A DNA stretch of 63,075 nucleotides, counting the filler, from Pelomyxa schiedti (lineage: Eukaryota; Protista; Evosea): NCBI GenBank assembly GCA_020536535.1. It is 7 parts of 7 records of this genome, joined end to end, with 100 filler letters (N's around TTAATTAATTAA, not from the genome) between each part and the next. Parts side by side here need not be neighbours in the genome. Positions count along the whole stretch, not along the records: positions 1 to 19,409 come from JAHLWZ010000005.1; 6 more parts are not named here. One strand, given 5' to 3'. Positions 1,073-18,635 of this stretch are shown one piece after another (position 1 is the stretch's first letter; each line of letters opens with the position of its first letter). The translations under genes were made by a program, and so were the position numbers. Under the pieces are notes generated by a model. It was not told the origin of the DNA. It searched no databases and saw only the letters and a program-made list of their open reading frames with translations.

Positions 1073-1595
1073 CTCTCATCAGCCTTTTCATACGACGTGG
1101 CCCACACAATGCTGCATGGAGCAACCACAAGTACAACCTACAAGAATCGATTGTCAACGAAAGTTCGATCCCATCATCCAGAAATAACGAGAATAATGGG
1201 GAAACAAAAAACCATACGGAGGTGACAATGAGCACTAGACCGAAAGGCACTGAGGGAGACCAACAGTGACACCCTTTTCTGTGGTGTTCCTCCTTGTTGC
1301 TGCCGCCGCCGTTACCGTGCTTGTTGTTGTTGCTGTTGCGAGGTGCGCCCTTTGTTGCGATGGCCCTGGCCTCGTTCATGCTGGCCTGGTCCTCGATCAG
1401 CTCCTGGCGGTACTCGTCGGCGACGTGGGTGGCCATCACGGCGGCGTCCATCATGACCACCACCTGAGCCTGCTGGCTGCTGGCGTTGGTGTTGGCCGTG
1501 GACGGTGCTGCGCTCTCTGCTCGCACAATCACGGATGACGATGGCAGAGGAGGGGTGCTGTTGTCCTGGGGTTGTACCTTGTTCCCTTTGGGCAT
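1073..1595 (-). CDS. 5' part of a membrane protein of unknown function (truncated by gap)
   Basis: ATG at 1595 (MPKGNKVQPQDNS...). A low-complexity N-terminus is followed by the hydrophobic segment VPFGLVLIVTS, a gtatg...gtag intron, and VVLVVAPCSIVWATSYE. Confidence 0.55.
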
Positions 1596-1846
1596 TTTTG
1601 GTTCTGCTGGCTTGCTGGCTTTGCAGTGTTGGTTCGGGGGGGTTTGTGGCTTTTTTTTGTTTTGCGTTGTGTGTTTTGTGTTTTGTGTTTTCTGTTCTTA
1701 CTTGTTGTTTTTTTTGTAGGACGAGAAAAGACTGAGGCGAAACACTCAATCTCAGGGATTTCGTTGATCAGTCTCCTTCGGGGAATGCGGGTTTTCAACC
1801 ACACAGTGAACTCCAGATTTTGTTGATTCCCGAGAGTCAAAACCAA

Positions 1847-4378
1847 TTAAAATAAGGTTCTTTCGGGTGTGTCGCCTGGAAAGGAACCCAGGGGAAGAAG
1901 TGACATGGATTCGGGTGTGATCCCGAAGAAGGAAATGAGCCACTGTATCATTCTGCCTGTGTGTTTGCTGTTGTCCTGTGTGTTTCTTGTGGAAAGTTGG
2001 TCAGTTAGCACATACATAAGGTCAGCCAGGTGGCTGGGTGTTGGTGGTGATCCAAGGGCTTCTGCTGGGGTCAGTAGGAAGTATTCTGTGTACCACTTGA
2101 GCTCTGGGAAGTGGGACGGGCCGTGGGTGAACAGTGAGAGGAATAGGGATGAGGGGTCACTGAGGTATCCTTTGTTGAGCCTGAACTTGTTGGCGAACCA
2201 AATGGCACAGCTGAGGTGGTTTGTATCAAGGAACTTGGTGAACAATTTCTTCATGTCATCTGATTGGAATTCACAGCAGCAGGGAGATAGGTTCCCAAGT
2301 GCAACCATCATGGGAAGCCGGTAGGTGCTACAGAGTGAGTACCATAGGTCCGGAAGAACAAGGGCTGGTGTTACATGGAAGTACTGCAGAGTCCACAGTA
2401 CTAGTAGTGATTTCTTTGGATCCGTGGTTTGCTTTGCCATGTCAAAAGAAAGAGCCTGACTGACCACCTTCTGCATTGGCAGAAAGGCAACCAACTTGTG
2501 CAAGTCAAAGAAGTTGGAAAGGCACTGCAGCCTCTCAGGGCTGGGGTCGACAGCAGAAATCATGGAAAGAATATCATGTTCGGTAGAGTAGCCTCTATTT
2601 AGTACATATGGAATAACCTCAGCTAGAAAGTTCTCTCTGTCTGGAAAATTGGACCATGATGGCTTGGTAATGAAAGTATCCAGCATAAACAGATACTGGG
2701 CCCTTTGGAAGGTAGAAGAGAATGTATCTAATAGCCACCTAAACGGGCCCACTAATGTGTGTGACCAGCAGTCGGAAATTACTTGAAACAGGTCACTTTC
2801 ACTCCACTTGAAATTCTGTGATAGGAATCCTGCAGCTCTGAACCTACAAGGGTTTGCAACCTGGCTTTCCAAGTAACTTTGGACTGTAGAAACGGCCAGC
2901 AAAGATTCTTCATGCACTTCTTCCTCTCTTAAGGTAAATGTTGCATGCAGCCACGCTAGTGATTCTACAGAATCTTGTATGCACAATCTCACAGCCACCT
3001 TTTTTATTGTTTCTCGGCTCACATGTGATGGTGCACATCTTTCCAGTAACACCTTGTACGTTTCAAGATTGATAGACTTCAATAGTATGGCGTTTATAAC
3101 ATCAGGAACTTGGTCTGGCATCCCTCCACATAGAACTTGTACATATTTGGTATTACCAGTTTCGCAGGCTGTCAGTAGGTTTTCCTCCCACCACTTCACA
3201 GAGTAAAAAACAGTGATTTTCAGGTGCTCGTCAATAGTGGAGTAATTAAGTGCTTCCCAGGCCTTCGATGCCATAGCTGCATTATATTTGTCCCTAAAGA
3301 ACATAAACGCTTCAGCACAACCTGAGGATGCAGCTTTCCTCAGGGGGATCGTTAATTCCCAGTCCGTAGTCTCATAGAAGTCCCAAATGAACTCCAGCAA
3401 AGCAACATTCCCAGAAGAGGAGGCATTTCTCAGAGCTTTATGACCATGCAACACCCAAGTATCAGGTGGTAGGGACTCCAGAATCCACTTCACGCCTTTC
3501 AATTGCCCCACTGAGCAGCATGCATACAGGGCCGTAATTATCTCCGCTTCTTCAGTTTCTGTCCACGCTCCCCTTGTCCCAAAAACGGTATCCATTACCC
3601 AGCGAGCAAACTTCATGTTCCCGTGGCCCAGGCTGTACACCAACGGGCCAGCAGCGGAAGGCTTCAGCCACGAGTAAGCCACTTTATCCACCACGTTCCT
3701 CACGGCGCCGCACTCAAAGACCACCTCAGACCCTACGTTCCTCCACTCCAAGCAGTCCCTTGTCTCCACAACCTCCCTCGCGGGAGCGTGCTCGAGCAGC
3801 CACCTTGCCACCTCCGTGTTCCCGTGGGTAGCCGCGGCGTTCATGGCCCTGTCCCAGCCCCCCCACTTGCCGACCAGCGCCTTGGAGACCAGAGCCAGCA
3901 GAGGGAACATGGCGCCGGTCGAGCCCAGCAGCAGCGCCTCCTCGGCGCCCTCGTAGTGCCTCAGGTGCGACGCCAGCCGCGAGTCTCTCACGGCCTCGCT
4001 GCACATTCTGTCCATGCAGTCGCACATTGGCCGCGAGGACTCCTCGCCCCACCTGCTTTCCGCGCCGTCGCCGCACACTCGGTTCCACTCTGATTGTGTG
4101 TAGTATTCCGGCCGGAACCCGTTCCTCAGTCCAGGAACCAGCACGGGAAACACAAACTTCCACAAGAACGAGGACACCCACAGCACCCTCTCGGCCTTGT
4201 TGTTGTGGTTATTGTGCACAGCGGTATCATTTTCTCTCAGCCCTTGTACTCCTGAGTCACCGGGAATAACTACATTATGGGGCGCACTACAACAAGCACC
4301 GTCGTAGTCGTCATCGCCGAAGCCGAACGAGCGTAGGAACGACGACGCAGTGTCGTTTGACGTTGTCGAAGTACACAT
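1847..4378 (-). CDS. Intronless degenerate ankyrin-repeat-like protein (about 843 aa)
   Basis: Long ORF, first ATG at 4378. Ankyrin-like motifs: AMNAAATHGNTEVARWLLE, ALYACCSVGQLKGVKWIL, ALRNASSSGNVALLEF, LLTACETGNTKYVQVL. Confidence 0.75.
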   Translation of the reverse strand: MCTSTTSNDTASSFLRSFGFGDDDYDGACCSAPHNVVIPGDSGVQGLRENDTAVHNNHNNKAERVLWVSSFLWKFVFPVLVPGLRNGFRPEYYTQSEWNRVCGDGAESRWGEESSRPMCDCMDRMCSEAVRDSRLASHLRHYEGAEEALLLGSTGAMFPLLALVSKALVGKWGGWDRAMNAAATHGNTEVARWLLEHAPAREVVETRDCLEWRNVGSEVVFECGAVRNVVDKVAYSWLKPSAAGPLVYSLGHGNMKFARWVMDTVFGTRGAWTETEEAEIITALYACCSVGQLKGVKWILESLPPDTWVLHGHKALRNASSSGNVALLEFIWDFYETTDWELTIPLRKAASSGCAEAFMFFRDKYNAAMASKAWEALNYSTIDEHLKITVFYSVKWWEENLLTACETGNTKYVQVLCGGMPDQVPDVINAILLKSINLETYKVLLERCAPSHVSRETIKKVAVRLCIQDSVESLAWLHATFTLREEEVHEESLLAVSTVQSYLESQVANPCRFRAAGFLSQNFKWSESDLFQVISDCWSHTLVGPFRWLLDTFSSTFQRAQYLFMLDTFITKPSWSNFPDRENFLAEVIPYVLNRGYSTEHDILSMISAVDPSPERLQCLSNFFDLHKLVAFLPMQKVVSQALSFDMAKQTTDPKKSLLVLWTLQYFHVTPALVLPDLWYSLCSTYRLPMMVALGNLSPCCCEFQSDDMKKLFTKFLDTNHLSCAIWFANKFRLNKGYLSDPSSLFLSLFTHGPSHFPELKWYTEYFLLTPAEALGSPPTPSHLADLMYVLTDQLSTRNTQDNSKHTGRMIQWLISFFGITPESMSLLPLGSFPGDTPERTLF

Positions 4379-4626
4379 GATCCGCTCGGTTCCGTTTGTG
4401 AAAACTCGTAACTGATGGTAGACTCTGGGTCCTGGAGTGTTGCGCCGTAGCACCTCCAAAATGTGAAAGCTTCCTTTACTGAAGGGAAGAGGAGAGCTCC
4501 TCAAAGGAGAGCGTCAAACGCTTATCTCGTATCTACAACGGTTCCGTAAATTGAACGGGTTTTTTTTTTTGAAAGAAAAGAAAGGACGGGTAGACACACA
4601 GGGGCAACACACAGGTGAATAACGCA

Positions 4627-5854
4627 ATGCCGCGAGGGAGATCGTCAAGAAAGAAGGACCAGGAAACGTCATTTGCGGTGTATGTGTACCGCGTGTTGAA
4701 ACAAGTGCACCCCGACGTTGGGATCTCAAAGAAGGCAATGCAGGCACGTCCCGTTGCCACTCTTCTCTGTTTTGTTATTTAATTTTCTTTGTTTTTTGTT
4801 TTTTTGGTTAAACTGGAAAGTTAAACAATGGCCTGAATCCATCATCCCTTTTGTTTTTTTTTACCCCCTCCCGGCCACGACCCTCCCTCAACACTCCATC
4901 TGAGCCTTATGTTTAAACTAAACTGAAAAACGTCTGCTGCAGATCATGAACGACTATGTAAATGATAACTTGAGAAAAGTGGCGAAGGAGGCTTCTTTGT
5001 TGTGTAAAATTAATCATCTTGGAACACTTGGCAGTAGGGAGGTACGACCAAACAGCTTCAACCGAGAACTGACATCATTGTAGATACAGACTGCAGTTCG
5101 TCTGGTTCTTGTTTCAGAACTAGCAAAACACGCGATATCTGAGGGGACCAAAGTATCGAATTGTTCTCCAATTCCCCTAAAAAAAATTTTTCCAACAGGC
5201 TGTTACCAAATACAATGGAGATGCAGATTCTGTGGATTCCGATGGCGCACTACCCAGTAAAGCTAAGGAGGTTGACAGTACTGATGAGGAGGATTCTGGT
5301 GTGAAATGGAATGAAAATGACGATGGAGTTGCAAGGCCCGACCGCTCTACTGCTGCATATCGCAAACCAAGGTGCGCTACTCGTTCTGCCAAGGCCGGTC
5401 TCCAGTTTCCTATAGGAAGAATTACGAAGTTGCTCAAGGAGGGTCACTATAGCAAGCGGATAGGCGGAAGTACCCAAATATAATCTGCTATGTGAAACAC
5501 TAACCTCTCACAAGCTGCTTCCGTTTACCTTGCTGCCGTGTTAGAGTACCTTGTAGCTGAAGTACTAGAACTTGCCGGCAATGCCTCCAAAGATCTGCAG
5601 GTGAAGCGCATTACCCCCAGGCATCTTCAACTCGCTATCCGCGGTGATGAGGAGCTGGACAAGGTGTGCATCTTACCCAACGGCAACTCTCTAACATAAT
5701 CCAGTTAATGAAACACTGTACTATCGCCGGCGGAGGAGTCATACCTCACATCCACAAGGCCCTGATCCCTAACATGCCTCCATCCAAAGCAAACGAAGGA
5801 GACTCTGAGAACGAAGGTTGTTCCTCACCCCAGTGCTCCACACAAGAGTTCTGA
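4627..5854 (+). CDS. H2B-H2A: Fused histone H2B-H2A doublet (284 aa, 6 exons: 4627-4743, 4943-5041, 5084-5152, 5199-5469, 5515-5663, 5705-5854)
   Basis: Spliced H2B: [39 protein letters not shown]|IMNDYVND...GSRE|[23 protein letters not shown]|AVTKY. It continues without a stop through an acidic linker into H2A: [14 protein letters not shown]...[49 protein letters not shown]|[20 protein letters not shown]...STQEF*. Confidence 0.93.
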
Positions 5855-6097
5855 AAACAACCACCAAGGGTTATTTTTCAATAAATAACAAAACAAACAA
5901 AATAAAAACCGGTTGATCAAACGGCGACGTTTGAACCGTTATTATCAAACCGCGCCTTAGAAGAAACCAAATAAAAAAAATACAACAACAAAAAAAAACA
6001 ACGCCATCAGCGCTCAATTAAAGAGCGAAACGCCACCGCACCGAAAGCAGCTCGCCGGCACGCGACACGCCGAAACCACACAGAACAACATAACATT

Positions 6098-6679
6098 ATG
6101 GGAAACAACCTGGTGGCGCTGGACACGGCGGACTGCGACGCGTGCCTGGACTCTGGGCCCGACTGCACCTACTGCCGCGGCAGCTCGTTCTTCGACTCGG
6201 CGAGCGCGTGCCTGTGCAACCCGGACCCGTGGGAGGACTGCGACGACGTCGCGTTCGGCAGCCGCGCGTACCGCACCCACGTCGCGTGCAGCCCCGGCGA
6301 GACCGCCGCCGTCGTGCTGGCCTGCATCCTGATCCCCGCCGCCATTCTCACTTGTGGGATAGTGGCATGCTGCTGCTGCTGCCGCCGCAGCCACAAGAAG
6401 AAGACTGAGGGCGATGGGAAGTACGAGGCCTCGTATGATGGTGTTGGTGTTGTGACTGTTGGTGGTGGTATCACTGCTGTACCTATGGTTCAGATTTCGA
6501 CTGGTGGTGGCGGGATGACGCCTGTCGGTGTGGAGGCCACTGTGTATACGAACAATGTGGGATTCGCGCCTCCTGTGACGGTTCCAGCTCCTTATGATCC
6601 TATGTATGCACAATACTCGCATGACGGGGGTGCAGTGCCATCTGCGTATCCACCGGCCACAAGTACCTTGCCCAAGTAG
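6098..6679 (+). CDS. Small single-pass membrane protein with Cys-rich ectodomain, juxtamembrane poly-Cys and Pro/Tyr-rich tail
   Basis: 193-aa ATG ORF: CDACLDSGPDCTYC..., TM segment AAVVLACILIPAAILTCGIVA, CCCCC then a basic stretch RRSHKKK. GC3-rich codons in the 5' half. Confidence 0.75.
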   Translation: MGNNLVALDTADCDACLDSGPDCTYCRGSSFFDSASACLCNPDPWEDCDDVAFGSRAYRTHVACSPGETAAVVLACILIPAAILTCGIVACCCCCRRSHKKKTEGDGKYEASYDGVGVVTVGGGITAVPMVQISTGGGGMTPVGVEATVYTNNVGFAPPVTVPAPYDPMYAQYSHDGGAVPSAYPPATSTLPK

Positions 6680-7073
6680 GCCCCCGTCCCCTTCCCAATA
6701 ATTATTACTGACTGGCACCCCCAAACAAAAAAAAAAAGGTGTTATGGGTGTGAACAGCCCATTGATGGGGACAAGTTGATATGTGATGATCAGCAGTGGC
6801 ACAAATCTTGCTTCTTGTCACACCAGCAACAGAACGTGTAGTATCATTTACACCTCGTTTTCATCCAACAAGTTACACAAGTGGATTTTGAACATTTATT
6901 TATTGTAAAATTCGAATTCTACATCCACGAAGTTTTCTTTTCTTGTTGTGTGTAGATCTGAACAACCACAATTCCGGTAAAAATGTAATTTAGAATTACA
7001 AGAAGCCCCAAGGATTTAAAAGCGAGGAACCAACCCAAAAACATCAAAATTAAAAAATAAACAAGCAAAGAGG

Positions 7074-10000
7074 ATGAGGAGCGCACTTCTGGTGTCCCTT
7101 TTGTTGTTCTTCAGCACCACGTCGGCCATATGGGAAGAAACTATCTACTACGAAATGACAGGTATGCGTTTTTTTTCCGCCCTTTAAACCGTTTGAACCT
7201 AAAAACCTTCGCAGACTCGGACTCATGCAGCAGCCCTATCTACGTGGAAGTGGAACAGACTTCGACTTGCTACGCATCCACCGATTGCTATTGGGGGTCT
7301 GACTATAATTCCTGGACTCACTGCCTCGACGAGATGCCAGCAATCGATTCCTACTTTGATGAGCCGTATGTTTTGGAATTCCTTCTTCCGTCGGCTTACT
7401 TTGTTTGCAAGTTATTATTCTTACATTCTATGGACGGATGAGTGCAACGGAAAAGAGGTGTTTCAGTTCATCGTAGCCAAGGAATCCTGTGTTATGTCTT
7501 CTTATATGAGCACCTACCGGGGTTGGAAATGCAACCAAGCCCAAGGCGAAATCACTGTAGATTCCCCTCAAGAATTTTTCGGTCTTTTCTGACTCCTCCC
7601 AGAAAACAGGCAACTACGACGACTCCACATGCGCCGCAGGGTACGATTATGATACACTTACTCCTTACTACGGGTATCGCCACGGCGAATGCTTCTACTC
7701 CTCGGGAAGCGGCTACTATTCTGTGGATTGTGATGCTGCCAGCACAGCAACCGCGGGCTATCAGCTCATCACCTACCACCCAATTCTAAGTGAAGGTGTG
7801 TGCTTGTCCAGATCGCATTCTTTCGCCCATAACATCGCAACAGTTGGAGCCTGTGATGGAACCACAGCGATCCTCGGGTACGAGTACTATTACACTGATG
7901 ATTGCGCCTCCTATGACTGCGTTGCTGGCCCCACTTGGATGGAGACCTGGTCATGTGTTGCTACCGAGCCCAGCCCATGGACTCTCATTTCTGACACCAC
8001 GAACCCGTGTGTCCCTCCACGCTTCATTGTGTTCTCTGACAGGAGAGTTTTCCAGACCATTTGTGCTGAGATATTTCTCTCACAATGATAACTTCTGCAG
8101 CAGTGATGAGTTGACCTCCACTGAAGTGTGGGCCTCAACTTGCATGGCAACTTCTGCCAGTACTTCGATTAATATTGTTGAAACCAGTTCCTACCTGAAC
8201 GTCAGTTACATTTTTGTCTCATTTCATCTCAACTCACCATCAATCGCCAGTTTGAAGTCTTTAATTACGCTGCTGATTGTACAAGTTATTACACGACAGA
8301 ACAATACATTTACAAAGGTGGAGATGAAACAGTTCCCGGCTGCTTCAGAACTACATCATCTGATGGAATGTATTACTCACTGTCCCAAGAGCAGAGTTTT
8401 AACAAGGCATACCAGACGATCGAGTACTTTGCCGGTGTCAACACATCAGGTGTGTCTGGGAACTTTTAATCTGGCTTCCCGTTTATTTTTCCACACAGCA
8501 ACCAAGATCATGATTGAGCAGTTCTACACTGAGCACTGTCTTACACAGACGGACGATGGCGGATTGTCCTTCGCAAACTGGATCTGCACAGACGCCGAGA
8601 ATCTCCCTGATCCATTTGACTATTGGGACGAGTGTGTACCTTCAGCGAGTTCAAACGCGCACTAACGATATGCCTCAGTGCTATTTTGGAGTTGTACTTT
8701 GGAACGGAGGCTTCGTCGTGCAGCGAAGGCAATGACTGGTTGTTCAGAAGGGCAATGACTCGAGATTGCGTTGCCGATCAAGACTCGTCGAAAGGATACT
8801 CGCACTTTGGTTGCTCATCAACTGCCACCTCATCTGATTTGAGGGTGTGTTTTCTTTTCTCCACTTTGGAAAGCCACACACACATATATATATATTTTAT
8901 ATTTCGCATTAATCAAAAAGAACAGTTCTGGTCCAACGGTGATGCCAATTGCACTGGAGGAACTTATTCCTACATTGATTACTCTTCCTCCAGTGGCATG
9001 AAAATGGACTACTGCCTCGCTGGTGCCTACGCGGACTACAGCTTCTCCGAGCTTCACTGTGATCCACCCAACCCAGCTTATCAAATCATGAAGACATACA
9101 CTGATGCCGCAAAGAGTACTTTCTCTCCCTCCTCACATCGTCACACTATGTGCAGCAACAAAATTTCTCATATGAGCTTTCTTTCGCAGCGGAGCTTATT
9201 TCCGTTGAAGTGTTTTACACAGACTACTGCACCGAGGTTGAACCAACGTCATCCAACTTCGCGTTCGACTACACATGCCAAGCCTCAATCGACACACTCA
9301 CAATCGACATTGACATGTGAGACTTCTTCCCTGTTTTTAATAATATTATATATATATATATCCGGCCTACGGCGCGATCGTCCTCTGACTTTTCATTATT
9401 GAAACCAACCAACCAACCAACCAACCAACCAACCAACCAACCAACCAACCAACCAACCAACCAACCAACCAACCAACCAACCAACCAACCAACCAACCAA
9501 CCAACCAACCAACCAACCAACCACACACACACATACAGGGCGATCACAGTCACACGGTTCTCAGACTCGACGTGCACAACACCCAAGAAGCACTGGAACT
9601 ATTACTCGCCCGAGTGCCACGATTCCGACATCACAACCGACTCTTATCACGTCACGTGCTCCGCCGACGACTCTTACGCCGACGTAGAGGTATCCCCCTC
9701 CATCAATCGATTACCCCATAAGAATCAACACAACAACACAACAACACAACAACAAACACACACAACAGGTGTACAGCTGCGACGCAGACACGCTGGACGG
9801 GTGCCGAGGTTCGTGCTCATACTTCTCGGAGGAGGTCGACGCCACGAGGTGGAGCGGGTACGCCGACGGTTGCTTCTGGGATTATGACAGTTACTCTTAC
9901 GTGACTGTGGAATGTGCTCCCGCCAACCCAAAGTGGCAGGCCGTTTATTCTTTCCCTGGTCCAACCGTCGTTGGTATGTTTCGAGTCGACTTCCAACCTT

Positions 10001-10171
10001 CATTAAAGAATATTACGCACCTTATTAAATATCAATCAACCCAACCGCGCACCTTTTTACGTGGGCTTTTTGTTTGGGACTTTTTGAGTAGTGACGAACG
10101 AGCTCACTAACTAACTGTTCACAGAAAAGACCGGTGACAAGGTGGTTGACATGCACTATTTCTGGTCAGAG
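7074..10171 (+). CDS. Large multi-exon Cys/Tyr/Asp-rich secreted or surface protein, truncated at the palindrome centre
   Basis: ATG 7074 gives signal peptide [18 protein letters not shown], followed by a gtatg intron. Successive exons carry repeated 'Y.D..C...C' modules ([37 protein letters not shown]). Confidence 0.7.
9403..9522 (+). repeat. (AACC)30 microsatellite, probably intronic
   Basis: Perfect tetranucleotide tandem repeat just upstream of a ...catacag acceptor. Confidence 0.95.
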
Positions 10172-13100
10172 GTGAGGGAAAAATTTGTGGAGAGGATCAA
10201 TCATACTCATCCCACAGGGCATAAACATCAGGTTCGTCAGTTGTGCACACAGCACTCTGAACGACGTTGCCGGAGGCATAAGTCCAACCAATGTCATACT
10301 CCACACAGTTCTCTGACCAGAAATAGTGCATGTCAACCACCTTGTCACCGGTCTTTTCTGTGAACAGTTAGTTAGTGAGCTCGTTCGTCACTACTCAAAA
10401 AGTCCCAAACAAAAAGCCCACGTAAAAAGGTGCGCGGTTGGGTTGATTGATATTTAATAAGGTGCGTAATATTCTTTAATGAAGGTTGGAAGTCGACTCG
10501 AAACATACCAACGACGGTTGGACCAGGGAAAGAATAAACGGCCTGCCACTTTGGGTTGGCGGGAGCACATTCCACAGTCACGTAAGAGTAACTGTCATAA
10601 TCCCAGAAGCAACCGTCGGCGTACCCGCTCCACCTCGTGGCGTCGACCTCCTCCGAGAAGTATGAGCACGAACCTCGGCACCCGTCCAGCGTGTCTGCGT
10701 CGCAGCTGTACACCTGTTGTGTGTGTTTGTTGTTGTGTTGTTGTGTTGTTGTGTTGATTCTTATGGGGTAATCGATTGATGGAGGGGGATACCTCTACGT
10801 CGGCGTAAGAGTCGTCGGCGGAGCACGTGACGTGATAAGAGTCGGTTGTGATGTCGGAATCGTGGCACTCGGGCGAGTAATAGTTCCAGTGCTTCTTGGG
10901 TGTTGTGCACGTCGAGTCTGAGAACCGTGTGACTGTGATCGCCCTGTATGTGTGTGTGTGGTTGGTTGGTTGGTTGGTTGGTTGGTTGGTTGGTTGGTTG
11001 GTTGGTTGGTTGGTTGGTTGGTTGGTTGGTTGGTTGGTTGGTTGGTTGGTTGGTTGGTTGGTTGGTTGGTTGGTTGGTTTCAATAATGAAAAGTCAGAGG
11101 ACGATCGCGCCGTAGGCCGGATATATATATATATAATATTATTAAAAACAGGGAAGAAGTCTCACATGTCAATGTCGATTGTGAGTGTGTCGATTGAGGC
11201 TTGGCATGTGTAGTCGAACGCGAAGTTGGATGACGTTGGTTCAACCTCGGTGCAGTAGTCTGTGTAAAACACTTCAACGGAAATAAGCTCCGCTGCGAAA
11301 GAAAGCTCATATGAGAAATTTTGTTGCTGCACATAGTGTGACGATGTGAGGAGGGAGAGAAAGTACTCTTTGCGGCATCAGTGTATGTCTTCATGATTTG
11401 ATAAGCTGGGTTGGGTGGATCACAGTGAAGCTCGGAGAAGCTGTAGTCCGCGTAGGCACCAGCGAGGCAGTAGTCCATTTTCATGCCACTGGAGGAAGAG
11501 TAATCAATGTAGGAATAAGTTCCTCCAGTGCAATTGGCATCACCGTTGGACCAGAACTGTTCTTTTTGATTAATGCGAAATATAAAATATATATATATGT
11601 GTGTGTGGCTTTCCAAAGTGGAGAAAAGAAAACACACCCTCAAATCAGATGAGGTGGCAGTTGATGAGCAACCAAAGTGCGAGTATCCTTTCGACGAGTC
11701 TTGATCGGCAACGCAATCTCGAGTCATTGCCCTTCTGAACAACCAGTCATTGCCTTCGCTGCACGACGAAGCCTCCGTTCCAAAGTACAACTCCAAAATA
11801 GCACTGAGGCATATCGTTAGTGCGCGTTTGAACTCGCTGAAGGTACACACTCGTCCCAATAGTCAAATGGATCAGGGAGATTCTCGGCGTCTGTGCAGAT
11901 CCAGTTTGCGAAGGACAATCCGCCATCGTCCGTCTGTGTAAGACAGTGCTCAGTGTAGAACTGCTCAATCATGATCTTGGTTGCTGTGTGGAAAAATAAA
12001 CGGGAAGCCAGATTAAAAGTTCCCAGACACACCTGATGTGTTGACACCGGCAAAGTACTCGATCGTCTGGTATGCCTTGTTAAAACTCTGCTCTTGGGAC
12101 AGTGAGTAATACATTCCATCAGATGATGTAGTTCTGAAGCAGCCGGGAACTGTTTCATCTCCACCTTTGTAAATGTATTGTTCTGTCGTGTAATAACTTG
12201 TACAATCAGCAGCGTAATTAAAGACTTCAAACTGGCGATTGATGGTGAGTTGAGATGAAATGAGACAAAAATGTAACTGACGTTCAGGTAGGAACTGGTT
12301 TCAACAATATTAATCGAAGTACTGGCAGAAGTTGCCATGCAAGTTGAGGCCCACACTTCAGTGGAGGTCAACTCATCACTGCTGCAGAAGTTATCATTGT
12401 GAGAGAAATATCTCAGCACAAATGGTCTGGAAAACTCTCCTGTCAGAGAACACAATGAAGCGTGGAGGGACACACGGGTTCGTGGTGTCAGAAATGAGAG
12501 TCCATGGGCTGGGCTCGGTAGCAACACATGACCAGGTCTCCATCCAAGTGGGGCCAGCAACGCAGTCATAGGAGGCGCAATCATCAGTGTAATAGTACTC
12601 GTACCCGAGGATCGCTGTGGTTCCATCACAGGCTCCAACTGTTGCGATGTTATGGGCGAAAGAATGCGATCTGGACAAGCACACACCTTCACTTAGAATT
12701 GGGTGGTAGGTGATGAGCTGATAGCCCGCGGTTGCTGTGCTGGCAGCATCACAATCCACAGAATAGTAGCCGCTTCCCGAGGAGTAGAAGCATTCGCCGT
12801 GGCGATACCCGTAGTAAGGAGTAAGTGTATCATAATCGTACCCTGCGGCGCATGTGGAGTCGTCGTAGTTGCCTGTTTTCTGGGAGGAGTCAGAAAAGAC
12901 CGAAAAATTCTTGAGGGGAATCTACAGTGATTTCGCCTTGGGCTTGGTTGCATTTCCAACCCCGGTAGGTGCTCATATAAGAAGACATAACACAGGATTC
13001 CTTGGCTACGATGAACTGAAACACCTCTTTTCCGTTGCACTCATCCGTCCATAGAATGTAAGAATAATAACTTGCAAACAAAGTAAGCCGACGGAAGAAG

Positions 13101-13408
13101 GAATTCCAAAACATACGGCTCATCAAAGTAGGAATCGATTGCTGGCATCTCGTCGAGGCAGTGAGTCCAGGAATTATAGTCAGACCCCCAATAGCAATCG
13201 GTGGATGCGTAGCAAGTCGAAGTCTGTTCCACTTCCACGTAGATAGGGCTGCTGCATGAGTCCGAGTCTGCGAAGGTTTTTAGGTTCAAACGGTTTAAAG
13301 GGCGGAAAAAAAACGCATACCTGTCATTTCGTAGTAGATAGTTTCTTCCCATATGGCCGACGTGGTGCTGAAGAACAACAAAAGGGACACCAGAAGTGCG
13401 CTCCTCAT
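10172..13408 (-). CDS. Mirror copy of the Cys-rich secreted protein; its reading frame continues through the palindrome spacer
   Basis: Exact reverse complement of 7074-10171. The spacer 10172-10310 continues the exon (...[28 protein letters not shown]...). Confidence 0.65.
10960..11079 (+). repeat. (GGTT)30 microsatellite, mirror of 9403-9522
   Basis: Perfect tandem repeat. Confidence 0.95.
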
Positions 13409-13802
13409 CCTCTTTGCTTGTTTATTTTTTAATTTTGATGTTTTTGGGTTGGTTCCTCGCTTTTAAATCCTTGGGGCTTCTTGTAATTCTAAATTACATT
13501 TTTACCGGAATTGTGGTTGTTCAGATCTACACACAACAAGAAAAGAAAACTTCGTGGATGTAGAATTCGAATTTTACAATAAATAAATGTTCAAAATCCA
13601 CTTGTGTAACTTGTTGGATGAAAACGAGGTGTAAATGATACTACACGTTCTGTTGCTGGTGTGACAAGAAGCAAGATTTGTGCCACTGCTGATCATCACA
13701 TATCAACTTGTCCCCATCAATGGGCTGTTCACACCCATAACACCTTTTTTTTTTTGTTTGGGGGTGCCAGTCAGTAATAATTATTGGGAAGGGGACGGGG
13801 GC

Positions 13803-14384
13803 CTACTTGGGCAAGGTACTTGTGGCCGGTGGATACGCAGATGGCACTGCACCCCCGTCATGCGAGTATTGTGCATACATAGGATCATAAGGAGCTGGAA
13901 CCGTCACAGGAGGCGCGAATCCCACATTGTTCGTATACACAGTGGCCTCCACACCGACAGGCGTCATCCCGCCACCACCAGTCGAAATCTGAACCATAGG
14001 TACAGCAGTGATACCACCACCAACAGTCACAACACCAACACCATCATACGAGGCCTCGTACTTCCCATCGCCCTCAGTCTTCTTCTTGTGGCTGCGGCGG
14101 CAGCAGCAGCAGCATGCCACTATCCCACAAGTGAGAATGGCGGCGGGGATCAGGATGCAGGCCAGCACGACGGCGGCGGTCTCGCCGGGGCTGCACGCGA
14201 CGTGGGTGCGGTACGCGCGGCTGCCGAACGCGACGTCGTCGCAGTCCTCCCACGGGTCCGGGTTGCACAGGCACGCGCTCGCCGAGTCGAAGAACGAGCT
14301 GCCGCGGCAGTAGGTGCAGTCGGGCCCAGAGTCCAGGCACGCGTCGCAGTCCGCCGTGTCCAGCGCCACCAGGTTGTTTCCCAT
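13803..14384 (-). CDS. Mirror copy of the small Cys-rich membrane protein
   Basis: Identical translation to 6098-6679. Confidence 0.7.
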   Translation of the reverse strand: MGNNLVALDTADCDACLDSGPDCTYCRGSSFFDSASACLCNPDPWEDCDDVAFGSRAYRTHVACSPGETAAVVLACILIPAAILTCGIVACCCCCRRSHKKKTEGDGKYEASYDGVGVVTVGGGITAVPMVQISTGGGGMTPVGVEATVYTNNVGFAPPVTVPAPYDPMYAQYSHDGGAVPSAYPPATSTLPK

Positions 14385-14627
14385 AATGTTATGTTGTTCT
14401 GTGTGGTTTCGGCGTGTCGCGTGCCGGCGAGCTGCTTTCGGTGCGGTGGCGTTTCGCTCTTTAATTGAGCGCTGATGGCGTTGTTTTTTTTTGTTGTTGT
14501 ATTTTTTTTATTTGGTTTCTTCTAAGGCGCGGTTTGATAATAACGGTTCAAACGTCGCCGTTTGATCAACCGGTTTTTATTTTGTTTGTTTTGTTATTTA
14601 TTGAAAAATAACCCTTGGTGGTTGTTT

Positions 14628-15855
14628 TCAGAACTCTTGTGTGGAGCACTGGGGTGAGGAACAACCTTCGTTCTCAGAGTCTCCTTCGTTTGCTTTGGAT
14701 GGAGGCATGTTAGGGATCAGGGCCTTGTGGATGTGAGGTATGACTCCTCCGCCGGCGATAGTACAGTGTTTCATTAACTGGATTATGTTAGAGAGTTGCC
14801 GTTGGGTAAGATGCACACCTTGTCCAGCTCCTCATCACCGCGGATAGCGAGTTGAAGATGCCTGGGGGTAATGCGCTTCACCTGCAGATCTTTGGAGGCA
14901 TTGCCGGCAAGTTCTAGTACTTCAGCTACAAGGTACTCTAACACGGCAGCAAGGTAAACGGAAGCAGCTTGTGAGAGGTTAGTGTTTCACATAGCAGATT
15001 ATATTTGGGTACTTCCGCCTATCCGCTTGCTATAGTGACCCTCCTTGAGCAACTTCGTAATTCTTCCTATAGGAAACTGGAGACCGGCCTTGGCAGAACG
15101 AGTAGCGCACCTTGGTTTGCGATATGCAGCAGTAGAGCGGTCGGGCCTTGCAACTCCATCGTCATTTTCATTCCATTTCACACCAGAATCCTCCTCATCA
15201 GTACTGTCAACCTCCTTAGCTTTACTGGGTAGTGCGCCATCGGAATCCACAGAATCTGCATCTCCATTGTATTTGGTAACAGCCTGTTGGAAAAATTTTT
15301 TTTAGGGGAATTGGAGAACAATTCGATACTTTGGTCCCCTCAGATATCGCGTGTTTTGCTAGTTCTGAAACAAGAACCAGACGAACTGCAGTCTGTATCT
15401 ACAATGATGTCAGTTCTCGGTTGAAGCTGTTTGGTCGTACCTCCCTACTGCCAAGTGTTCCAAGATGATTAATTTTACACAACAAAGAAGCCTCCTTCGC
15501 CACTTTTCTCAAGTTATCATTTACATAGTCGTTCATGATCTGCAGCAGACGTTTTTCAGTTTAGTTTAAACATAAGGCTCAGATGGAGTGTTGAGGGAGG
15601 GTCGTGGCCGGGAGGGGGTAAAAAAAAACAAAAGGGATGATGGATTCAGGCCATTGTTTAACTTTCCAGTTTAACCAAAAAAACAAAAAACAAAGAAAAT
15701 TAAATAACAAAACAGAGAAGAGTGGCAACGGGACGTGCCTGCATTGCCTTCTTTGAGATCCCAACGTCGGGGTGCACTTGTTTCAACACGCGGTACACAT
15801 ACACCGCAAATGACGTTTCCTGGTCCTTCTTTCTTGACGATCTCCCTCGCGGCAT
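14628..15855 (-). CDS. H2B-H2A: Mirror copy of the fused histone H2B-H2A doublet
   Basis: Reverse complement of 4627-5854 within the palindrome arm. Confidence 0.88.
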
Positions 15856-16103
15856 TGCGTTATTCACCTGTGTGTTGCCCCTGTGTGTCTACCCGTCCTT
15901 TCTTTTCTTTCAAAAAAAAAAACCCGTTCAATTTACGGAACCGTTGTAGATACGAGATAAGCGTTTGACGCTCTCCTTTGAGGAGCTCTCCTCTTCCCTT
16001 CAGTAAAGGAAGCTTTCACATTTTGGAGGTGCTACGGCGCAACACTCCAGGACCCAGAGTCTACCATCAGTTACGAGTTTTCACAAACGGAACCGAGCGG
16101 ATC

Positions 16104-18635
16104 ATGTGTACTTCGACAACGTCAAACGACACTGCGTCGTCGTTCCTACGCTCGTTCGGCTTCGGCGATGACGACTACGACGGTGCTTGTTGTAGTGCGC
16201 CCCATAATGTAGTTATTCCCGGTGACTCAGGAGTACAAGGGCTGAGAGAAAATGATACCGCTGTGCACAATAACCACAACAACAAGGCCGAGAGGGTGCT
16301 GTGGGTGTCCTCGTTCTTGTGGAAGTTTGTGTTTCCCGTGCTGGTTCCTGGACTGAGGAACGGGTTCCGGCCGGAATACTACACACAATCAGAGTGGAAC
16401 CGAGTGTGCGGCGACGGCGCGGAAAGCAGGTGGGGCGAGGAGTCCTCGCGGCCAATGTGCGACTGCATGGACAGAATGTGCAGCGAGGCCGTGAGAGACT
16501 CGCGGCTGGCGTCGCACCTGAGGCACTACGAGGGCGCCGAGGAGGCGCTGCTGCTGGGCTCGACCGGCGCCATGTTCCCTCTGCTGGCTCTGGTCTCCAA
16601 GGCGCTGGTCGGCAAGTGGGGGGGCTGGGACAGGGCCATGAACGCCGCGGCTACCCACGGGAACACGGAGGTGGCAAGGTGGCTGCTCGAGCACGCTCCC
16701 GCGAGGGAGGTTGTGGAGACAAGGGACTGCTTGGAGTGGAGGAACGTAGGGTCTGAGGTGGTCTTTGAGTGCGGCGCCGTGAGGAACGTGGTGGATAAAG
16801 TGGCTTACTCGTGGCTGAAGCCTTCCGCTGCTGGCCCGTTGGTGTACAGCCTGGGCCACGGGAACATGAAGTTTGCTCGCTGGGTAATGGATACCGTTTT
16901 TGGGACAAGGGGAGCGTGGACAGAAACTGAAGAAGCGGAGATAATTACGGCCCTGTATGCATGCTGCTCAGTGGGGCAATTGAAAGGCGTGAAGTGGATT
17001 CTGGAGTCCCTACCACCTGATACTTGGGTGTTGCATGGTCATAAAGCTCTGAGAAATGCCTCCTCTTCTGGGAATGTTGCTTTGCTGGAGTTCATTTGGG
17101 ACTTCTATGAGACTACGGACTGGGAATTAACGATCCCCCTGAGGAAAGCTGCATCCTCAGGTTGTGCTGAAGCGTTTATGTTCTTTAGGGACAAATATAA
17201 TGCAGCTATGGCATCGAAGGCCTGGGAAGCACTTAATTACTCCACTATTGACGAGCACCTGAAAATCACTGTTTTTTACTCTGTGAAGTGGTGGGAGGAA
17301 AACCTACTGACAGCCTGCGAAACTGGTAATACCAAATATGTACAAGTTCTATGTGGAGGGATGCCAGACCAAGTTCCTGATGTTATAAACGCCATACTAT
17401 TGAAGTCTATCAATCTTGAAACGTACAAGGTGTTACTGGAAAGATGTGCACCATCACATGTGAGCCGAGAAACAATAAAAAAGGTGGCTGTGAGATTGTG
17501 CATACAAGATTCTGTAGAATCACTAGCGTGGCTGCATGCAACATTTACCTTAAGAGAGGAAGAAGTGCATGAAGAATCTTTGCTGGCCGTTTCTACAGTC
17601 CAAAGTTACTTGGAAAGCCAGGTTGCAAACCCTTGTAGGTTCAGAGCTGCAGGATTCCTATCACAGAATTTCAAGTGGAGTGAAAGTGACCTGTTTCAAG
17701 TAATTTCCGACTGCTGGTCACACACATTAGTGGGCCCGTTTAGGTGGCTATTAGATACATTCTCTTCTACCTTCCAAAGGGCCCAGTATCTGTTTATGCT
17801 GGATACTTTCATTACCAAGCCATCATGGTCCAATTTTCCAGACAGAGAGAACTTTCTAGCTGAGGTTATTCCATATGTACTAAATAGAGGCTACTCTACC
17901 GAACATGATATTCTTTCCATGATTTCTGCTGTCGACCCCAGCCCTGAGAGGCTGCAGTGCCTTTCCAACTTCTTTGACTTGCACAAGTTGGTTGCCTTTC
18001 TGCCAATGCAGAAGGTGGTCAGTCAGGCTCTTTCTTTTGACATGGCAAAGCAAACCACGGATCCAAAGAAATCACTACTAGTACTGTGGACTCTGCAGTA
18101 CTTCCATGTAACACCAGCCCTTGTTCTTCCGGACCTATGGTACTCACTCTGTAGCACCTACCGGCTTCCCATGATGGTTGCACTTGGGAACCTATCTCCC
18201 TGCTGCTGTGAATTCCAATCAGATGACATGAAGAAATTGTTCACCAAGTTCCTTGATACAAACCACCTCAGCTGTGCCATTTGGTTCGCCAACAAGTTCA
18301 GGCTCAACAAAGGATACCTCAGTGACCCCTCATCCCTATTCCTCTCACTGTTCACCCACGGCCCGTCCCACTTCCCAGAGCTCAAGTGGTACACAGAATA
18401 CTTCCTACTGACCCCAGCAGAAGCCCTTGGATCACCACCAACACCCAGCCACCTGGCTGACCTTATGTATGTGCTAACTGACCAACTTTCCACAAGAAAC
18501 ACACAGGACAACAGCAAACACACAGGCAGAATGATACAGTGGCTCATTTCCTTCTTCGGGATCACACCCGAATCCATGTCACTTCTTCCCCTGGGTTCCT
18601 TTCCAGGCGACACACCCGAAAGAACCTTATTTTAA
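16104..18635 (+). CDS. Mirror copy of the ankyrin-repeat-like protein
   Basis: Identical translation to 1847-4378. Confidence 0.72.
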   Translation: MCTSTTSNDTASSFLRSFGFGDDDYDGACCSAPHNVVIPGDSGVQGLRENDTAVHNNHNNKAERVLWVSSFLWKFVFPVLVPGLRNGFRPEYYTQSEWNRVCGDGAESRWGEESSRPMCDCMDRMCSEAVRDSRLASHLRHYEGAEEALLLGSTGAMFPLLALVSKALVGKWGGWDRAMNAAATHGNTEVARWLLEHAPAREVVETRDCLEWRNVGSEVVFECGAVRNVVDKVAYSWLKPSAAGPLVYSLGHGNMKFARWVMDTVFGTRGAWTETEEAEIITALYACCSVGQLKGVKWILESLPPDTWVLHGHKALRNASSSGNVALLEFIWDFYETTDWELTIPLRKAASSGCAEAFMFFRDKYNAAMASKAWEALNYSTIDEHLKITVFYSVKWWEENLLTACETGNTKYVQVLCGGMPDQVPDVINAILLKSINLETYKVLLERCAPSHVSRETIKKVAVRLCIQDSVESLAWLHATFTLREEEVHEESLLAVSTVQSYLESQVANPCRFRAAGFLSQNFKWSESDLFQVISDCWSHTLVGPFRWLLDTFSSTFQRAQYLFMLDTFITKPSWSNFPDRENFLAEVIPYVLNRGYSTEHDILSMISAVDPSPERLQCLSNFFDLHKLVAFLPMQKVVSQALSFDMAKQTTDPKKSLLVLWTLQYFHVTPALVLPDLWYSLCSTYRLPMMVALGNLSPCCCEFQSDDMKKLFTKFLDTNHLSCAIWFANKFRLNKGYLSDPSSLFLSLFTHGPSHFPELKWYTEYFLLTPAEALGSPPTPSHLADLMYVLTDQLSTRNTQDNSKHTGRMIQWLISFFGITPESMSLLPLGSFPGDTPERTLF

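What the first reader, a model, noticed from the sequence alone, without database searches (positions are those of the whole stretch)
4627..5854. Cellular, intron-containing H2B-H2A histone doublet
Seen: a complete H2B fold ends ...SEGTK|AVTKY and runs in the same exon (5199-5469), without a stop, through about 55 residues into a complete H2A fold, so the fusion does not depend on a splice guess. Acidic-patch residues and the H2B ubiquitination-site Lys (AVTKY) are retained. Established: eukaryotic core histones are normally separate polypeptides, and H2B-H2A doublets in this order are typical of giant viruses such as Marseilleviridae. Inference: both halves look eukaryote-like and carry five introns, so this is probably an independent cellular fusion that forces a fixed variant H2A-H2B pair into nucleosomes.
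Basis: partly seen in the sequence, partly recalled or inferred. Interest (0 to 1): 0.9.

Follow-up and report, generated by a model that had tools for sequence, protein, structure and literature searches.

The report
Expressed cellular H2B-H2A fused histone gene
The anaerobic amoeba Pelomyxa schiedti has an intron-containing, transcribed and correctly spliced nuclear gene (one of three such genes) that encodes histones H2B and H2A as one polypeptide; this architecture was known from giant viruses, and the recent literature says it has not been observed in eukaryotes.

Summary
Window 4627-5854 (+) is a six-exon gene. Its 284-aa product is a public record, KAH3767910.1, named only "histone H2A [Pelomyxa schiedti]". 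It holds a complete H2B fold, a roughly 55-60-residue disordered acidic linker and a complete H2A fold. The H2B end (AVTKY), the linker and the H2A N-terminus lie in one exon (5199-5469).

Single-cell RNA-seq contigs join exons 2-6 exactly at the predicted GT-AG sites with no mismatch. Exon 1 is supported by purifying selection in a second allele, a conserved intron position and the public annotation, not directly by RNA.

The genome holds two more divergent H2B-H2A genes on contigs C612 and C930. They share intron positions with the window gene but not with the separate H2B, H2A(.X) and H2A.Z genes, which also exist.

The H2A half leans towards H2A.Z. An AlphaFold model superposes on engineered single-chain H2B-H2A dimers (TM up to 0.98).

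The origin is unresolved: a cellular fusion or an old transfer to or from giant viruses. Related doublets occur in one MMETSP transcript and in metagenomes. Use in nucleosomes is inferred, not shown.

Reviews state that no eukaryotic histone fusion is confirmed, so interest is high.

The parts
4627..4743 (+). Exon 1: start codon, short basic N-tail and H2B helix alpha1/L1 (MPRGRSS...GISKKAMQ). The donor of intron 1 is GC (GCACGT).
   Evidence: H2B alpha1, 41 bits to PDB H2B. A second allele on C2955 differs at 1 of 117 nt here, against about 12% differences in the flanking non-coding DNA. The paralog on C612 has an intron at the same position.
4744..4942 (+). Intron 1, 199 nt, GC-AG. Its removal is not directly shown in RNA.
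   Evidence: In the second allele it carries 9 mismatches and 40 gap columns in 202. A weak hint from RNA: the X3 cDNA 5' end reads AA+TGCAG before exon 2, which fits the exon 1 end AATGCAG but not the intron end GCTGCAG.
4943..5041 (+). Exon 2: H2B helix alpha2 and L2 ([10 protein letters not shown]...GTLGSRE).
   Evidence: RNA contigs X3 and X4 cover it and splice it to exon 3.
5042..5083 (+). Intron 2, 42 nt, GT-AG, removed in RNA.
   Evidence: joint 5039/5082, cut +2.
5084..5152 (+). Exon 3: H2B helix alpha3 and most of alphaC ([23 protein letters not shown]).
5153..5198 (+). Intron 3, 46 nt, GT-AG, removed in RNA. All three doublet paralogs have an intron at this position (EGTK|AVT); the separate H2B genes do not.
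5199..5469 (+). Exon 4, the fusion exon: the H2B C-terminus AVTKY, a roughly 55-60-residue acidic disordered linker with no in-frame Met, then the H2A N-terminal segment, alpha1 and L1.
   Evidence: RNA contigs cover 5199-5469 without any difference. The linker has pLDDT below 50 and net charge -4; there is no Met between residues 41 and 237.
5470..5514 (+). Intron 4, 45 nt, phase 1, GT-AG, removed in RNA in X3, X4 and X5. The position is shared by all three doublets.
5515..5663 (+). Exon 5: H2A helices alpha2-alpha3, H2A.Z-like ([33 protein letters not shown]), with the H2A acidic-patch residues.
   Evidence: (Histone, 5.9e-9).
5664..5704 (+). Intron 5, 41 nt, GT-AG, removed in RNA. The position is shared with the C930 paralog.
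5705..5854 (+). Exon 6: H2A docking domain ([18 protein letters not shown]), a C-terminal tail ending TQEF, and the stop codon.
   Evidence: (Histone_H2A_C, 3.5e-10).
5855..5876 (+). Start of the 3' UTR, covered by the same RNA contigs. Beyond 5876 a low-complexity stretch was skipped by the read tool.
14628..15855 (-). An identical second copy of the whole gene in the other arm of the contig's perfect palindrome. It is not independent evidence and is probably an amplification or assembly artefact.

Best explanation
This is a genuine, expressed nuclear gene of Pelomyxa schiedti. It is one member of a small lineage-specific family of three divergent paralogs, plus a second allele. Each member encodes a natural single-chain H2B-H2A dimer.

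Proposed mechanism:
- Shown (predicted model only): the N-terminal H2B fold and the C-terminal H2A fold of one chain pair in the normal histone handshake, while the acidic linker of roughly 55-60 residues stays disordered.
- Inferred: the 31-kDa product is handed to chaperones or remodellers and inserted next to an (H3-H4)2 tetramer as one pre-paired unit. The H2A half is an H2A/H2A.Z hybrid that leans towards H2A.Z and ends in TQEF.
- Inferred: a nucleosome carrying it therefore always holds this particular H2B variant with this particular H2A variant in 1:1 ratio. It would lack a long basic H2B N-tail and a free basic H2A N-tail, and the H2B ubiquitination lysine would be internal.
- Shown: separate H2B, H2A.X-type H2A and H2A.Z genes persist, so the doublets would be variants and not the bulk histones.
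- Open: whether the fusion arose in the amoeba lineage or was exchanged with giant viruses.
For: Gene model and identity with the public protein.

Two histone folds plus the H2A C-terminal domain.

Spliced RNA contigs join exons 2 to 6 exactly, in two runs of one sample. A third run from another study covers the linker to the 3' UTR.

No in-frame Met lies between residues 41 and 237, so H2A cannot be translated on its own.

The second allele on C2955 shows 1 difference in 216 exonic nt against 106 in 861 non-coding columns, which indicates purifying selection on exons 1 and 2.

Two further complete doublet genes exist, C612 (248 aa) and C930 (369 aa). They share intron positions (SRE|IQT, EGTK|AVT, phase 1 in IGG|T, ELxK|) and a (K/E)(H/S)CT motif. 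None of these is found in the separate genes.

The host's separate histone genes have introns of 43-62 nt, the same class as the doublet's 41-46 nt.

H3 and H4 are separate genes, and no NCLDV capsid gene was found in the assembly.

AF2 model: both folds have pLDDT above 90 and the linker below 50. Foldseek's best matches are engineered single-chain H2B-H2A and H2B-H2A.Z dimers, with target-normalised TM-score 0.93-0.98.

The acidic patch, the DNA-contact arginines and the docking motif are conserved.
Against: There is no protein-level evidence, so cleavage in the linker or non-chromatin use cannot be excluded.

The RNA evidence consists of assembled contigs, not raw reads. The contigs that link the H2B exons to the H2A exons come from one sample of the same study as the genome.

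Exon 1-exon 2 splicing is not directly seen. Both cDNA 5' ends carry a template-switch adaptor inside the gene.

The H2A-domain tree marginally rejects one clade for all three doublets (AU p = 0.03). C930 sits weakly with virus-type multiplets in both trees. A single cellular origin is therefore not established.

The acidic linker and the loss of basic tails could weaken DNA wrapping.
Confidence: 0.6

Rival explanations
1. The doublet family was acquired from a giant virus (Nucleocytoviricota) that already carried an H2B-H2A doublet. It was then domesticated in the amoeba nucleus, where it gained spliceosomal introns and duplicated. The gene is cellular now, but the fusion event was viral.
For: H2B-to-H2A order is the viral arrangement (PMC8357426, PMC9145170). 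The C930 paralog groups with metagenomic, virus-type doublets and triplets in both domain trees (94/93 and 83/80, unstarred). The closest full-length relatives include doublets on dense, intronless TARA scaffolds whose neighbouring genes have no Pfam hit. The nearest ESM Atlas cluster mixes Eukaryota and Nucleocytoviricota. Amoebae are classic giant-virus hosts (general knowledge).
Against: Identity to clearly viral-type multiplets is only 37-46% over the full length, and 27% to the Melbournevirus doublet. Identity to ordinary eukaryotic H2B and H2A is 62-74% per domain. C5 and C612 fall inside the H2A.Z clade with the host's own H2A.Z (98/99). The tail ends in an H2A.X-like TQEF, and the host's separate H2A ends in SQEL. 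The AVTK(Y/F)N junction residue is shared with the host's separate H2B genes. No NCLDV capsid gene was found in the assembly (this negative is weak). The branches involved are long, so attraction between long branches is possible.
Confidence: 0.22
2. The gene encodes a polyprotein precursor. The fused product is cut in the acidic linker, so the cell ends up with separate H2B and H2A.Z-like histones made in exact 1:1 ratio. The fusion would then serve co-expression, not chromatin structure.
For: The linker is long (about 55-60 residues), predicted disordered and contains basic pairs (for example RKPR) that could be protease sites (sequence). Linker length and sequence are not conserved among the paralogs: 19, 31 and 60 residues.
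Against: No known histone is made this way. The paralogs with 19- and 31-residue basic linkers resemble viral and engineered single-chain dimers that work uncut (PMC8357426; PDB matches). No conserved cleavage motif is seen across the three linkers.
Confidence: 0.1
3. The product is a soluble, non-nucleosomal H2A-H2B dimer mimic. It could act as a decoy or adaptor for acidic-patch or H2A-H2B binding factors, or for ubiquitin signalling, and would not be a building block of nucleosomes.
For: The basic tails are lost, the linker is acidic and the pI is 8.8, against about 10 for the other doublets. Ubiquitin genes lie next to both other paralogs, and in C930 one may be fused in frame.
Against: DNA-contact and H3-H4 docking residues are conserved as in nucleosomal H2A.Z and H2B. 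The fold model matches nucleosome-competent dimers.
Confidence: 0.05
4. The feature is an artefact or a dead gene: a mis-assembly of amplified single-cell DNA, a chimeric contig or a pseudogene.
For: The contig is a perfect 9.1-kb palindrome, typical of amplification chimeras. The genome comes from single-cell amplification.
Against: The junction lies inside one exon that RNA contigs from three runs in two studies cover without a single difference. The second allele is conserved in the exons only. Two divergent paralogs on contigs of 44 and 51 kb have the same architecture. The reading frame is intact.
Confidence: 0.03

Closest known systems
Marseilleviridae / Melbournevirus H2B-H2A histone doublets (PDB 7n8n; PMC8357426, PMC12297534)
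   Same: One polypeptide in H2B-then-H2A order, with intramolecular pairing. The model aligns to 7n8n_B with target-normalised TM-score 0.83. The tails are reduced.
   Different: The viral genes have no introns and act in cytoplasmic virus factories and virions. Sequence identity is only 27%. The Pelomyxa halves are 62-74% identical to ordinary eukaryotic histones. The gene is nuclear, has five spliceosomal introns, and coexists with separate H2A, H2A.Z and H2B genes.
Metagenomic Nucleocytoviricota histone repeats: doublets, H2B-H2A-H3 triplets and quadruplets (PMC11222145, PMC9145170). Here these are IMG/VR locus L048 and metagenome loci L053-L060 and L087.
   Same: The same domain order and AVTK junction. 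The C930 paralog groups weakly with them.
   Different: They are 37-46% identical to the window protein, have no introns, and sit on virus-like contigs, for example next to an H4 gene and a packaging-ATPase-like ORF in L048.
Eukaryote-like doublets of unknown host: MMETSP transcript P0228, ENA P0217, and TARA P0264 and P0266
   Same: They are 52-60% identical over the full length. P0217 and P0228 share the H2A/H2A.Z hybrid H2A half and fall in the same 98/99 clade. P0228 is a polyadenylated mRNA and shares a Cys-rich C-terminal motif.
   Different: The source organisms are unknown. The TARA examples lie among dense genes without Pfam hits and are probably viral. No introns are known, and the linker sequences are unrelated.
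Engineered single-chain H2B-H2A and H2B-H2A.Z chimeras used in structural biology (for example PDB 6w4l, 4nft, 7dlx, 6k0c)
   Same: The same topology. The AF2 model superposes with target-normalised TM-score 0.93-0.98 at about 50% identity. This shows that such a fusion is compatible with a native H2A-H2B dimer.
   Different: Those are laboratory constructs with short linkers. This is a natural gene with a long acidic linker.
Dedicated H2A.Z/H2B.Z variant pairs of apicomplexans and trypanosomes (from general knowledge; not tested here)
   Same: The idea of a fixed variant H2B partnered with an H2A.Z-type histone.
   Different: There the two are separate proteins. Here the pairing is covalent.

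Membership tests
Core histone H2B | Histone fold alpha1-L1-alpha2-L2-alpha3 plus alphaC, ending ...SEGTKAVTKY | tested here: met
   Pfam Histone matches residues 1-100. PDB H2B matches. The domain is 62-70% identical to eukaryotic H2B. The AF2 model has helices at 17-27, 35-62, 70-80 and 83-102 with pLDDT above 93.
Core histone H2B | Long basic N-terminal tail | tested here: not met
   Only about 16 residues precede alpha1 ([16 protein letters not shown]), whereas PDB H2B aligns from its residue 24 onward.
Histone H2A (family level) | Histone fold plus the H2A C-terminal docking domain (PF16211), the AGLQFP motif and the acidic-patch residues | tested here: met
   Histone_H2A_C scores 2.2e-13. 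PDB H2A and H2A.Z score 140-150 bits. E196, E201, E204, D230, E231 and E232 are conserved.
Histone variant H2A.Z | H2A.Z-type alpha2-alpha3 and docking sequence ([27 protein letters not shown]...[11 protein letters not shown]), and grouping with H2A.Z in trees | tested here: met
   The sequence carries this motif. It falls in a 98/99 clade with Pelomyxa and Populus H2A.Z. PDB H2A.Z scores about 9 bits above H2A. Only a few H2A.Z reference sequences were available for the tree.
Histone variant H2A.Z | The H2A.Z L1 loop (one residue longer, SHGRVGAT type) and the one-residue deletion before the docking segment | tested here: not met
   L1 reads [13 protein letters not shown], which has the H2A/H2A.X length and type; the best PDB match for exon 4 is H2AX. 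[13 protein letters not shown] has the H2A length, not the H2A.Z length (alignment; comparison with the host H2A.Z). It is therefore a hybrid and not a standard H2A.Z.
Histone variant H2A.X | C-terminal SQ(E/D)-hydrophobic motif | tested here: inconclusive
   The window gene ends in TQEF: Thr replaces Ser, but it is still an S/T-Q site. Paralog C612 ends in SPQEF. The host's separate H2A ends in SQEL.
Viral (Nucleocytoviricota) H2B-H2A doublet histones | H2B and H2A folds in one polypeptide, in that order | tested here: met
Viral (Nucleocytoviricota) H2B-H2A doublet histones | Encoded in a giant-virus genome, without introns, and closest in sequence to viral doublets | tested here: not met
   The gene has five spliceosomal introns, four of them confirmed in RNA. 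It sits in a host assembly with host-like intron sizes. No NCLDV capsid gene was found. Identity is 27-46% to viral doublets against 62-74% to eukaryotic histones.
Nucleosomal histone (functional membership) | Incorporation into nucleosomes with H3-H4 and DNA | not testable with these tools
   Only inferred, from conserved residues and from the fold model's match to nucleosome-competent dimers.

The most novel reading that the evidence does not exclude
Fused H2B-H2A histones are a living cellular feature of Archamoebae, and perhaps of other protists such as the MMETSP organism. They have existed long enough to duplicate and diverge. The proposed pre-LECA ratchet that locked eukaryotic histones into separate proteins would then not be absolute. 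Cellular doublets of this kind could be the source, or the surviving sister, of the eukaryote-like doublets seen in giant viruses, rather than the reverse.
Probability: 0.2. Interest if true: 0.95.

Novelty: new variant of a known kind. Interest (0 to 1): 0.82.

Why it matters
Current accounts of nucleosome origins use fused viral histones as stand-ins for a lost intermediate. [quoted passage not shown] From this they argue for an irreversible split before the last eukaryotic common ancestor.

Pelomyxa schiedti provides a spliced, expressed, multi-copy H2B-H2A family in a free-living amoeba, alongside normal separate histones. This gives the first cellular system in which several questions can be tested directly:
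- Is a covalent H2A-H2B dimer compatible with eukaryotic chaperones, SWR1-type exchange, tail-based signalling and ubiquitination?
- What does a nucleosome with an obligate variant pair do?
- In which direction did histone genes move between amoebae and giant viruses?

The case also shows that public annotation hides such genes, since this one is labelled simply "histone H2A".

Tried and rejected
- My first exon translations were off by one base and were redone.
- The search for homologous proteins with exon 4 alone found only one H2A, from Selenidium, because of the tool's length and word limits.
- Most two-stretch hits of the exhaustive search were mis-annotated tandem H2A-H2A proteins of animals and plants, not doublets. 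The animal "H2AX-like" proteins of about 260 aa are presumably the mis-spliced gene clusters that PMC9145170 describes. I did not inspect them.
- A viral-contig scan with the single protein found nothing. With an alignment of doublets it found one H2B-H2A-H3 triplet and single H2B genes on 1.8-2.5-Mb contigs, which I take to be pandoraviruses.
- L065, the nearest H2B in the tree, is two separate tandem genes (H2B, then H2A.X with its own ATG), not a doublet.
- Recent gene conversion from the host H2A.Z gene was rejected. Read side by side, the two DNA sequences differ at many synonymous sites.
- An exact look-up of the 5'-truncated product (residues 41-284) found no record.
- No paper links Pelomyxa schiedti to histone doublets.
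- A search for H4-H3 doublets in this genome found H3 and H4 only on different contigs.
- The NCLDV capsid family gave no match, but that search also matched nothing in the control genomes, so it is a weak negative.
- The H2B-domain tree is largely unresolved (87 columns).
- Complex prediction was not used, because the single-chain model already answered the pairing question.
Full report
**What is there.** The region 4627-5854 (+) holds a six-exon gene. The exons are 4627-4743, 4943-5041, 5084-5152, 5199-5469, 5515-5663 and 5705-5854. The introns are 199 nt (GC-AG) and 42, 46, 45 and 41 nt (GT-AG).

- Exons 1-3 encode an H2B fold with only a short N-tail.
- Exon 4 starts with the H2B C-terminus AVTKY. 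It continues without a stop through an acidic stretch into the H2A N-terminal segment, alpha1 and L1.
- Exons 5-6 encode H2A alpha2-alpha3, the docking domain and a tail ending in TQEF.

Pfam and PDB searches on the single exons confirm H2B alpha1, the H2A N-terminus, the Histone domain and Histone_H2A_C. The exhaustive protein search returned a 284-aa public protein, P0002, that is identical to this model, with exon 4 at residues 96-185. The record is KAH3767910.1/KAH3767915.1, "histone H2A [Pelomyxa schiedti]", on a single contig of 19,409 nt. The organism is therefore the free-living anaerobic amoeba Pelomyxa schiedti (Archamoebae). The public annotation does not mention the fusion.

**Expression and splicing.** Seven public runs hold the stretch. 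I laid four of them on 4400-6100.

- Two single-cell RNA-seq runs, X3 and X4, come from one sample in the same study as the genome. Each gives one contig that runs exon 2, exon 3, exon 4, exon 5, exon 6 and 3' UTR. Introns 2-5 are removed exactly at the predicted sites, with no mismatch and no gap.
- A contig of X5, from a different study, covers 5292-5870 and is spliced at introns 4 and 5.
- The DNA run X1 agrees with the window over 4400-5876 without any difference.

A single spliced mRNA therefore carries the H2B exons and the H2A exons. The protein has no Met between residues 41 and 237, so H2A cannot be translated separately.

Limits: these are assembled contigs, not raw reads. Both RNA contigs end 5' in a template-switch adaptor, at 4938 and 4979, so exon 1-exon 2 splicing is not directly shown. 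The X3 end reads AA+TGCAG before exon 2. This fits the end of exon 1 (AATGCAG) and not the end of the intron (GCTGCAG), but two bases are only a weak hint.

**Independent support for exon 1.** A short contig, C2955, is a 90%-identical second allele or copy of window 3987-5058. Exons 1 and 2 differ at 1 of 216 nt with no gaps. The upstream region and intron 1 show 29 mismatches and 77 gap columns in 861 columns. That is the signature of coding exons separated by an intron. The C612 paralog has a GT-AG intron at the same codon position.

**A family, not a single gene.** Searching the whole assembly (52.4 Mb, 5,337 contigs) with Pfam Histone, Histone_H2A_C and the exon peptides revealed two more H2B-H2A genes. 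One is on C612 (minus strand, 20651-21719; 5 exons, 248 aa). The other is on C930 (plus strand, 4929-6399; 6 exons, 369 aa). Both have intact frames and GT/GC-AG introns.

The three genes are only 53-61% identical per domain, yet they share intron positions:
- after ...SRE (all three);
- between EGTK and AVT (all three);
- phase 1 in the L1/alpha2 junction of H2A (all three);
- after ELxK (C5 and C930);
- after KKAMx (C5 and C612).

They also share a (K/E)(H/S)CT motif ahead of the docking glycines. None of these introns occurs in the separate genes:
- canonical H2B on C150;
- H2B with an acidic tail on C1109;
- an H2A.X-type H2A ending in SQEL on C248;
- H2A.Z on C828.

The separate genes' introns are 43-62 nt (one is 123 nt), the same size class as the doublets'. 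H3 and H4 genes lie on different contigs, and I saw no H4-H3 doublet.

**A note on method.** The spliced models of the two paralogs and of the four separate genes have no reference. They were searched only exon by exon, by reference. The joined proteins were not sent to any search or fold tool. They were joined only inside scripts, for local alignment and trees. The window's own spliced product was used through its public record, P0002.

**What kind of H2A and H2B.** The H2B half is 62-70% identical to ordinary eukaryotic H2B and has no specific close relative.

The H2A half is a hybrid. L1 and the start of alpha2 are of the H2A/H2A.X type and length. Alpha2-alpha3 and the docking motif are H2A.Z-like. 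The spacing before the docking segment has the H2A length. PDB H2A.Z sequences score about 9 bits above H2A and H2A.X.

In the H2A-domain tree (41 rows, 103 columns):
- C5 and C612 pair at 97/86.
- They lie in a 98/99 clade with Pelomyxa and Populus H2A.Z and with two other eukaryote-like doublets, P0217 and P0228.
- C930 falls with metagenomic, virus-type multiplets (94/93, unstarred).
- Holding the three Pelomyxa doublets together costs 27.6 log-likelihood units (AU p = 0.03).

The H2B tree (87 columns) is mostly unresolved. It again pairs C5 with C612 (91/87) and places C930 weakly with the viral-type set (83/80). Shared introns argue for one origin of all three doublets, while the H2A tree argues against a simple history. 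Partial conversion by the separate genes, or long-branch artefacts, could reconcile the two. I could not decide between them. DNA comparison excludes recent conversion from the host H2A.Z gene, because the two sequences differ at many synonymous sites (read side by side).

**Relatives elsewhere.** Full-length relatives at 52-60% identity are an MMETSP transcript (P0228), an ENA contig (P0217) and two doublets on TARA scaffolds (P0264, P0266). P0228 is polyadenylated, and its Cys-rich C-terminal motif resembles the window protein's. The TARA doublets have no introns and sit among tightly packed genes without Pfam hits, which suggests giant viruses. Clearly virus-type repeats are more distant. 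They include an IMG/VR H2B-H2A-H3 triplet with a neighbouring H4 gene, and metagenomic doublets at 37-46% identity. The Melbournevirus doublet is 27% identical in the structural alignment. No NCLDV capsid gene was found in the assembly (weak negative).

**Structure.** AlphaFold2 was run on a 12-sequence doublet alignment. Both folds have pLDDT above 90 and the linker (about residues 101-150) is below 50; pTM is 0.67. Foldseek's best PDB matches are engineered single-chain H2B-H2A and H2B-H2A.Z dimers, with target-normalised TM-score 0.93-0.98 and rmsd down to 0.6 Å. The model therefore predicts an ordinary intramolecular H2A-H2B handshake.

The acidic-patch residues of H2A (E196, E201, E204, D230, E231, E232) and of H2B (E84, E92), and the AVTK lysine, are conserved. 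The linker has 60 residues and net charge -4. The protein is 31.0 kDa with pI 8.8.

**Most likely mechanism.**
- Shown (predicted model): the chain folds on itself into a pre-paired variant dimer.
- Inferred: the dimer is delivered and inserted as one unit beside the (H3-H4)2 tetramer.
- Inferred: this fixes the H2B variant to an H2A.Z-leaning H2A in 1:1 ratio. It also removes the free basic H2A N-tail and most of the H2B N-tail, and leaves the H2B ubiquitination lysine internal.

Rivals are a viral origin of the fusion, cleavage of a polyprotein, a soluble non-nucleosomal role, and an artefact. The artefact is essentially excluded by the RNA contigs, the second allele and the paralogs.

**Comparison with what is known.** Doublet histones are established in archaea and giant viruses. 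Reviews and primary papers state that no eukaryotic histone fusion is confirmed, and that candidates are mis-spliced gene clusters (PMC9145170). [quoted passage not shown] A third review says that "as a rule" eukaryotes lack them (PMC10919886). I found no paper on Pelomyxa histones.

The sequence is public, but the architecture, its expression and the gene family appear undescribed. I rate it a new variant of a known kind. I put the probability that the gene and the fused mRNA are real above 0.9. I put about 0.6 on the nucleosomal single-chain function. The origin is open.

Noticed in passing
window 1073-10171 and 10311-19409: The contig is a perfect 9,099-nt inverted repeat (100% complementary) around a 139-nt spacer, so every gene in it, including the doublet, appears twice. 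This looks like a snap-back chimera from single-cell genome amplification rather than biology. GenBank carries two protein accessions for the same product.
   Followed up: partly
G000 contig C2955:1-1039 (locus L034), aligned with window 3987-5058: A second allele or copy at 90% identity. Exons 1-2 are almost unchanged (1 difference in 216 nt), while intron 1 and the upstream region have many substitutions and indels.
   Followed up: yes
G000 C930:5866-6738 (locus L043:1867-2739): The C930 doublet has a long C-terminal tail of SPFG/FG-like repeats. Directly downstream lies a ubiquitin-family ORF (Pfam 9e-26). A candidate 42-nt GT-AG intron (6372-6413) would join it in frame, giving a 469-aa H2B-H2A-ubiquitin-like protein. 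There is no RNA check.
   Followed up: partly
G000 C612:21853-22620 (locus L038), minus strand: A three-repeat polyubiquitin gene, with a divergent third repeat, lies immediately upstream of the C612 doublet on the same strand. This is the second case of a ubiquitin gene next to a doublet.
   Followed up: no
G000 C248:~11560-12010 (locus L041), minus strand: The separate major H2A of this genome ends in ...SQSQEL after a small terminal intron, so it is an H2A.X-type histone. The window doublet ends in TQEF and the C612 doublet in SPQEF.
   Followed up: partly
G000 C1109:~9050-9570 (locus L039), plus strand: This is a second separate H2B. A long Ser/Ala-rich reading frame lies upstream of the fold (gene start not determined), and about 45 very acidic residues follow AVTKFN at the C-terminus. 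It may be another H2B variant.
   Followed up: no
window 4744-4749 and G000 C612 intron 2: The same rare GC donor (GCACGT) is used in intron 1 of the window gene and in intron 2 of the C612 paralog.
   Followed up: no
window 1847-4504, minus strand: The upstream neighbour is an intron-free 885-aa ORF with ankyrin repeats (Pfam Ank_3, 1.9e-7). The other ORFs of the contig have no Pfam match. An RNA contig (X3) also covers 6010-6100, so the downstream neighbour appears to be transcribed.
   Followed up: partly
locus L046 (JGI 3300016982, Ga0186035_108983), 17-925: A polyadenylated MMETSP transcript encodes a 302-aa H2B-H2A doublet with a partial internal repeat of H2B alpha3-alphaC in its linker. 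The source organism could not be identified with the tools at hand.
   Followed up: partly
run X7 (bee metagenome) and runs X5 and X6 (study P2): Runs from other studies hold 11-28% of the stretch's sampled words. X5 proved to be a spliced transcript of this gene.
   Followed up: partly
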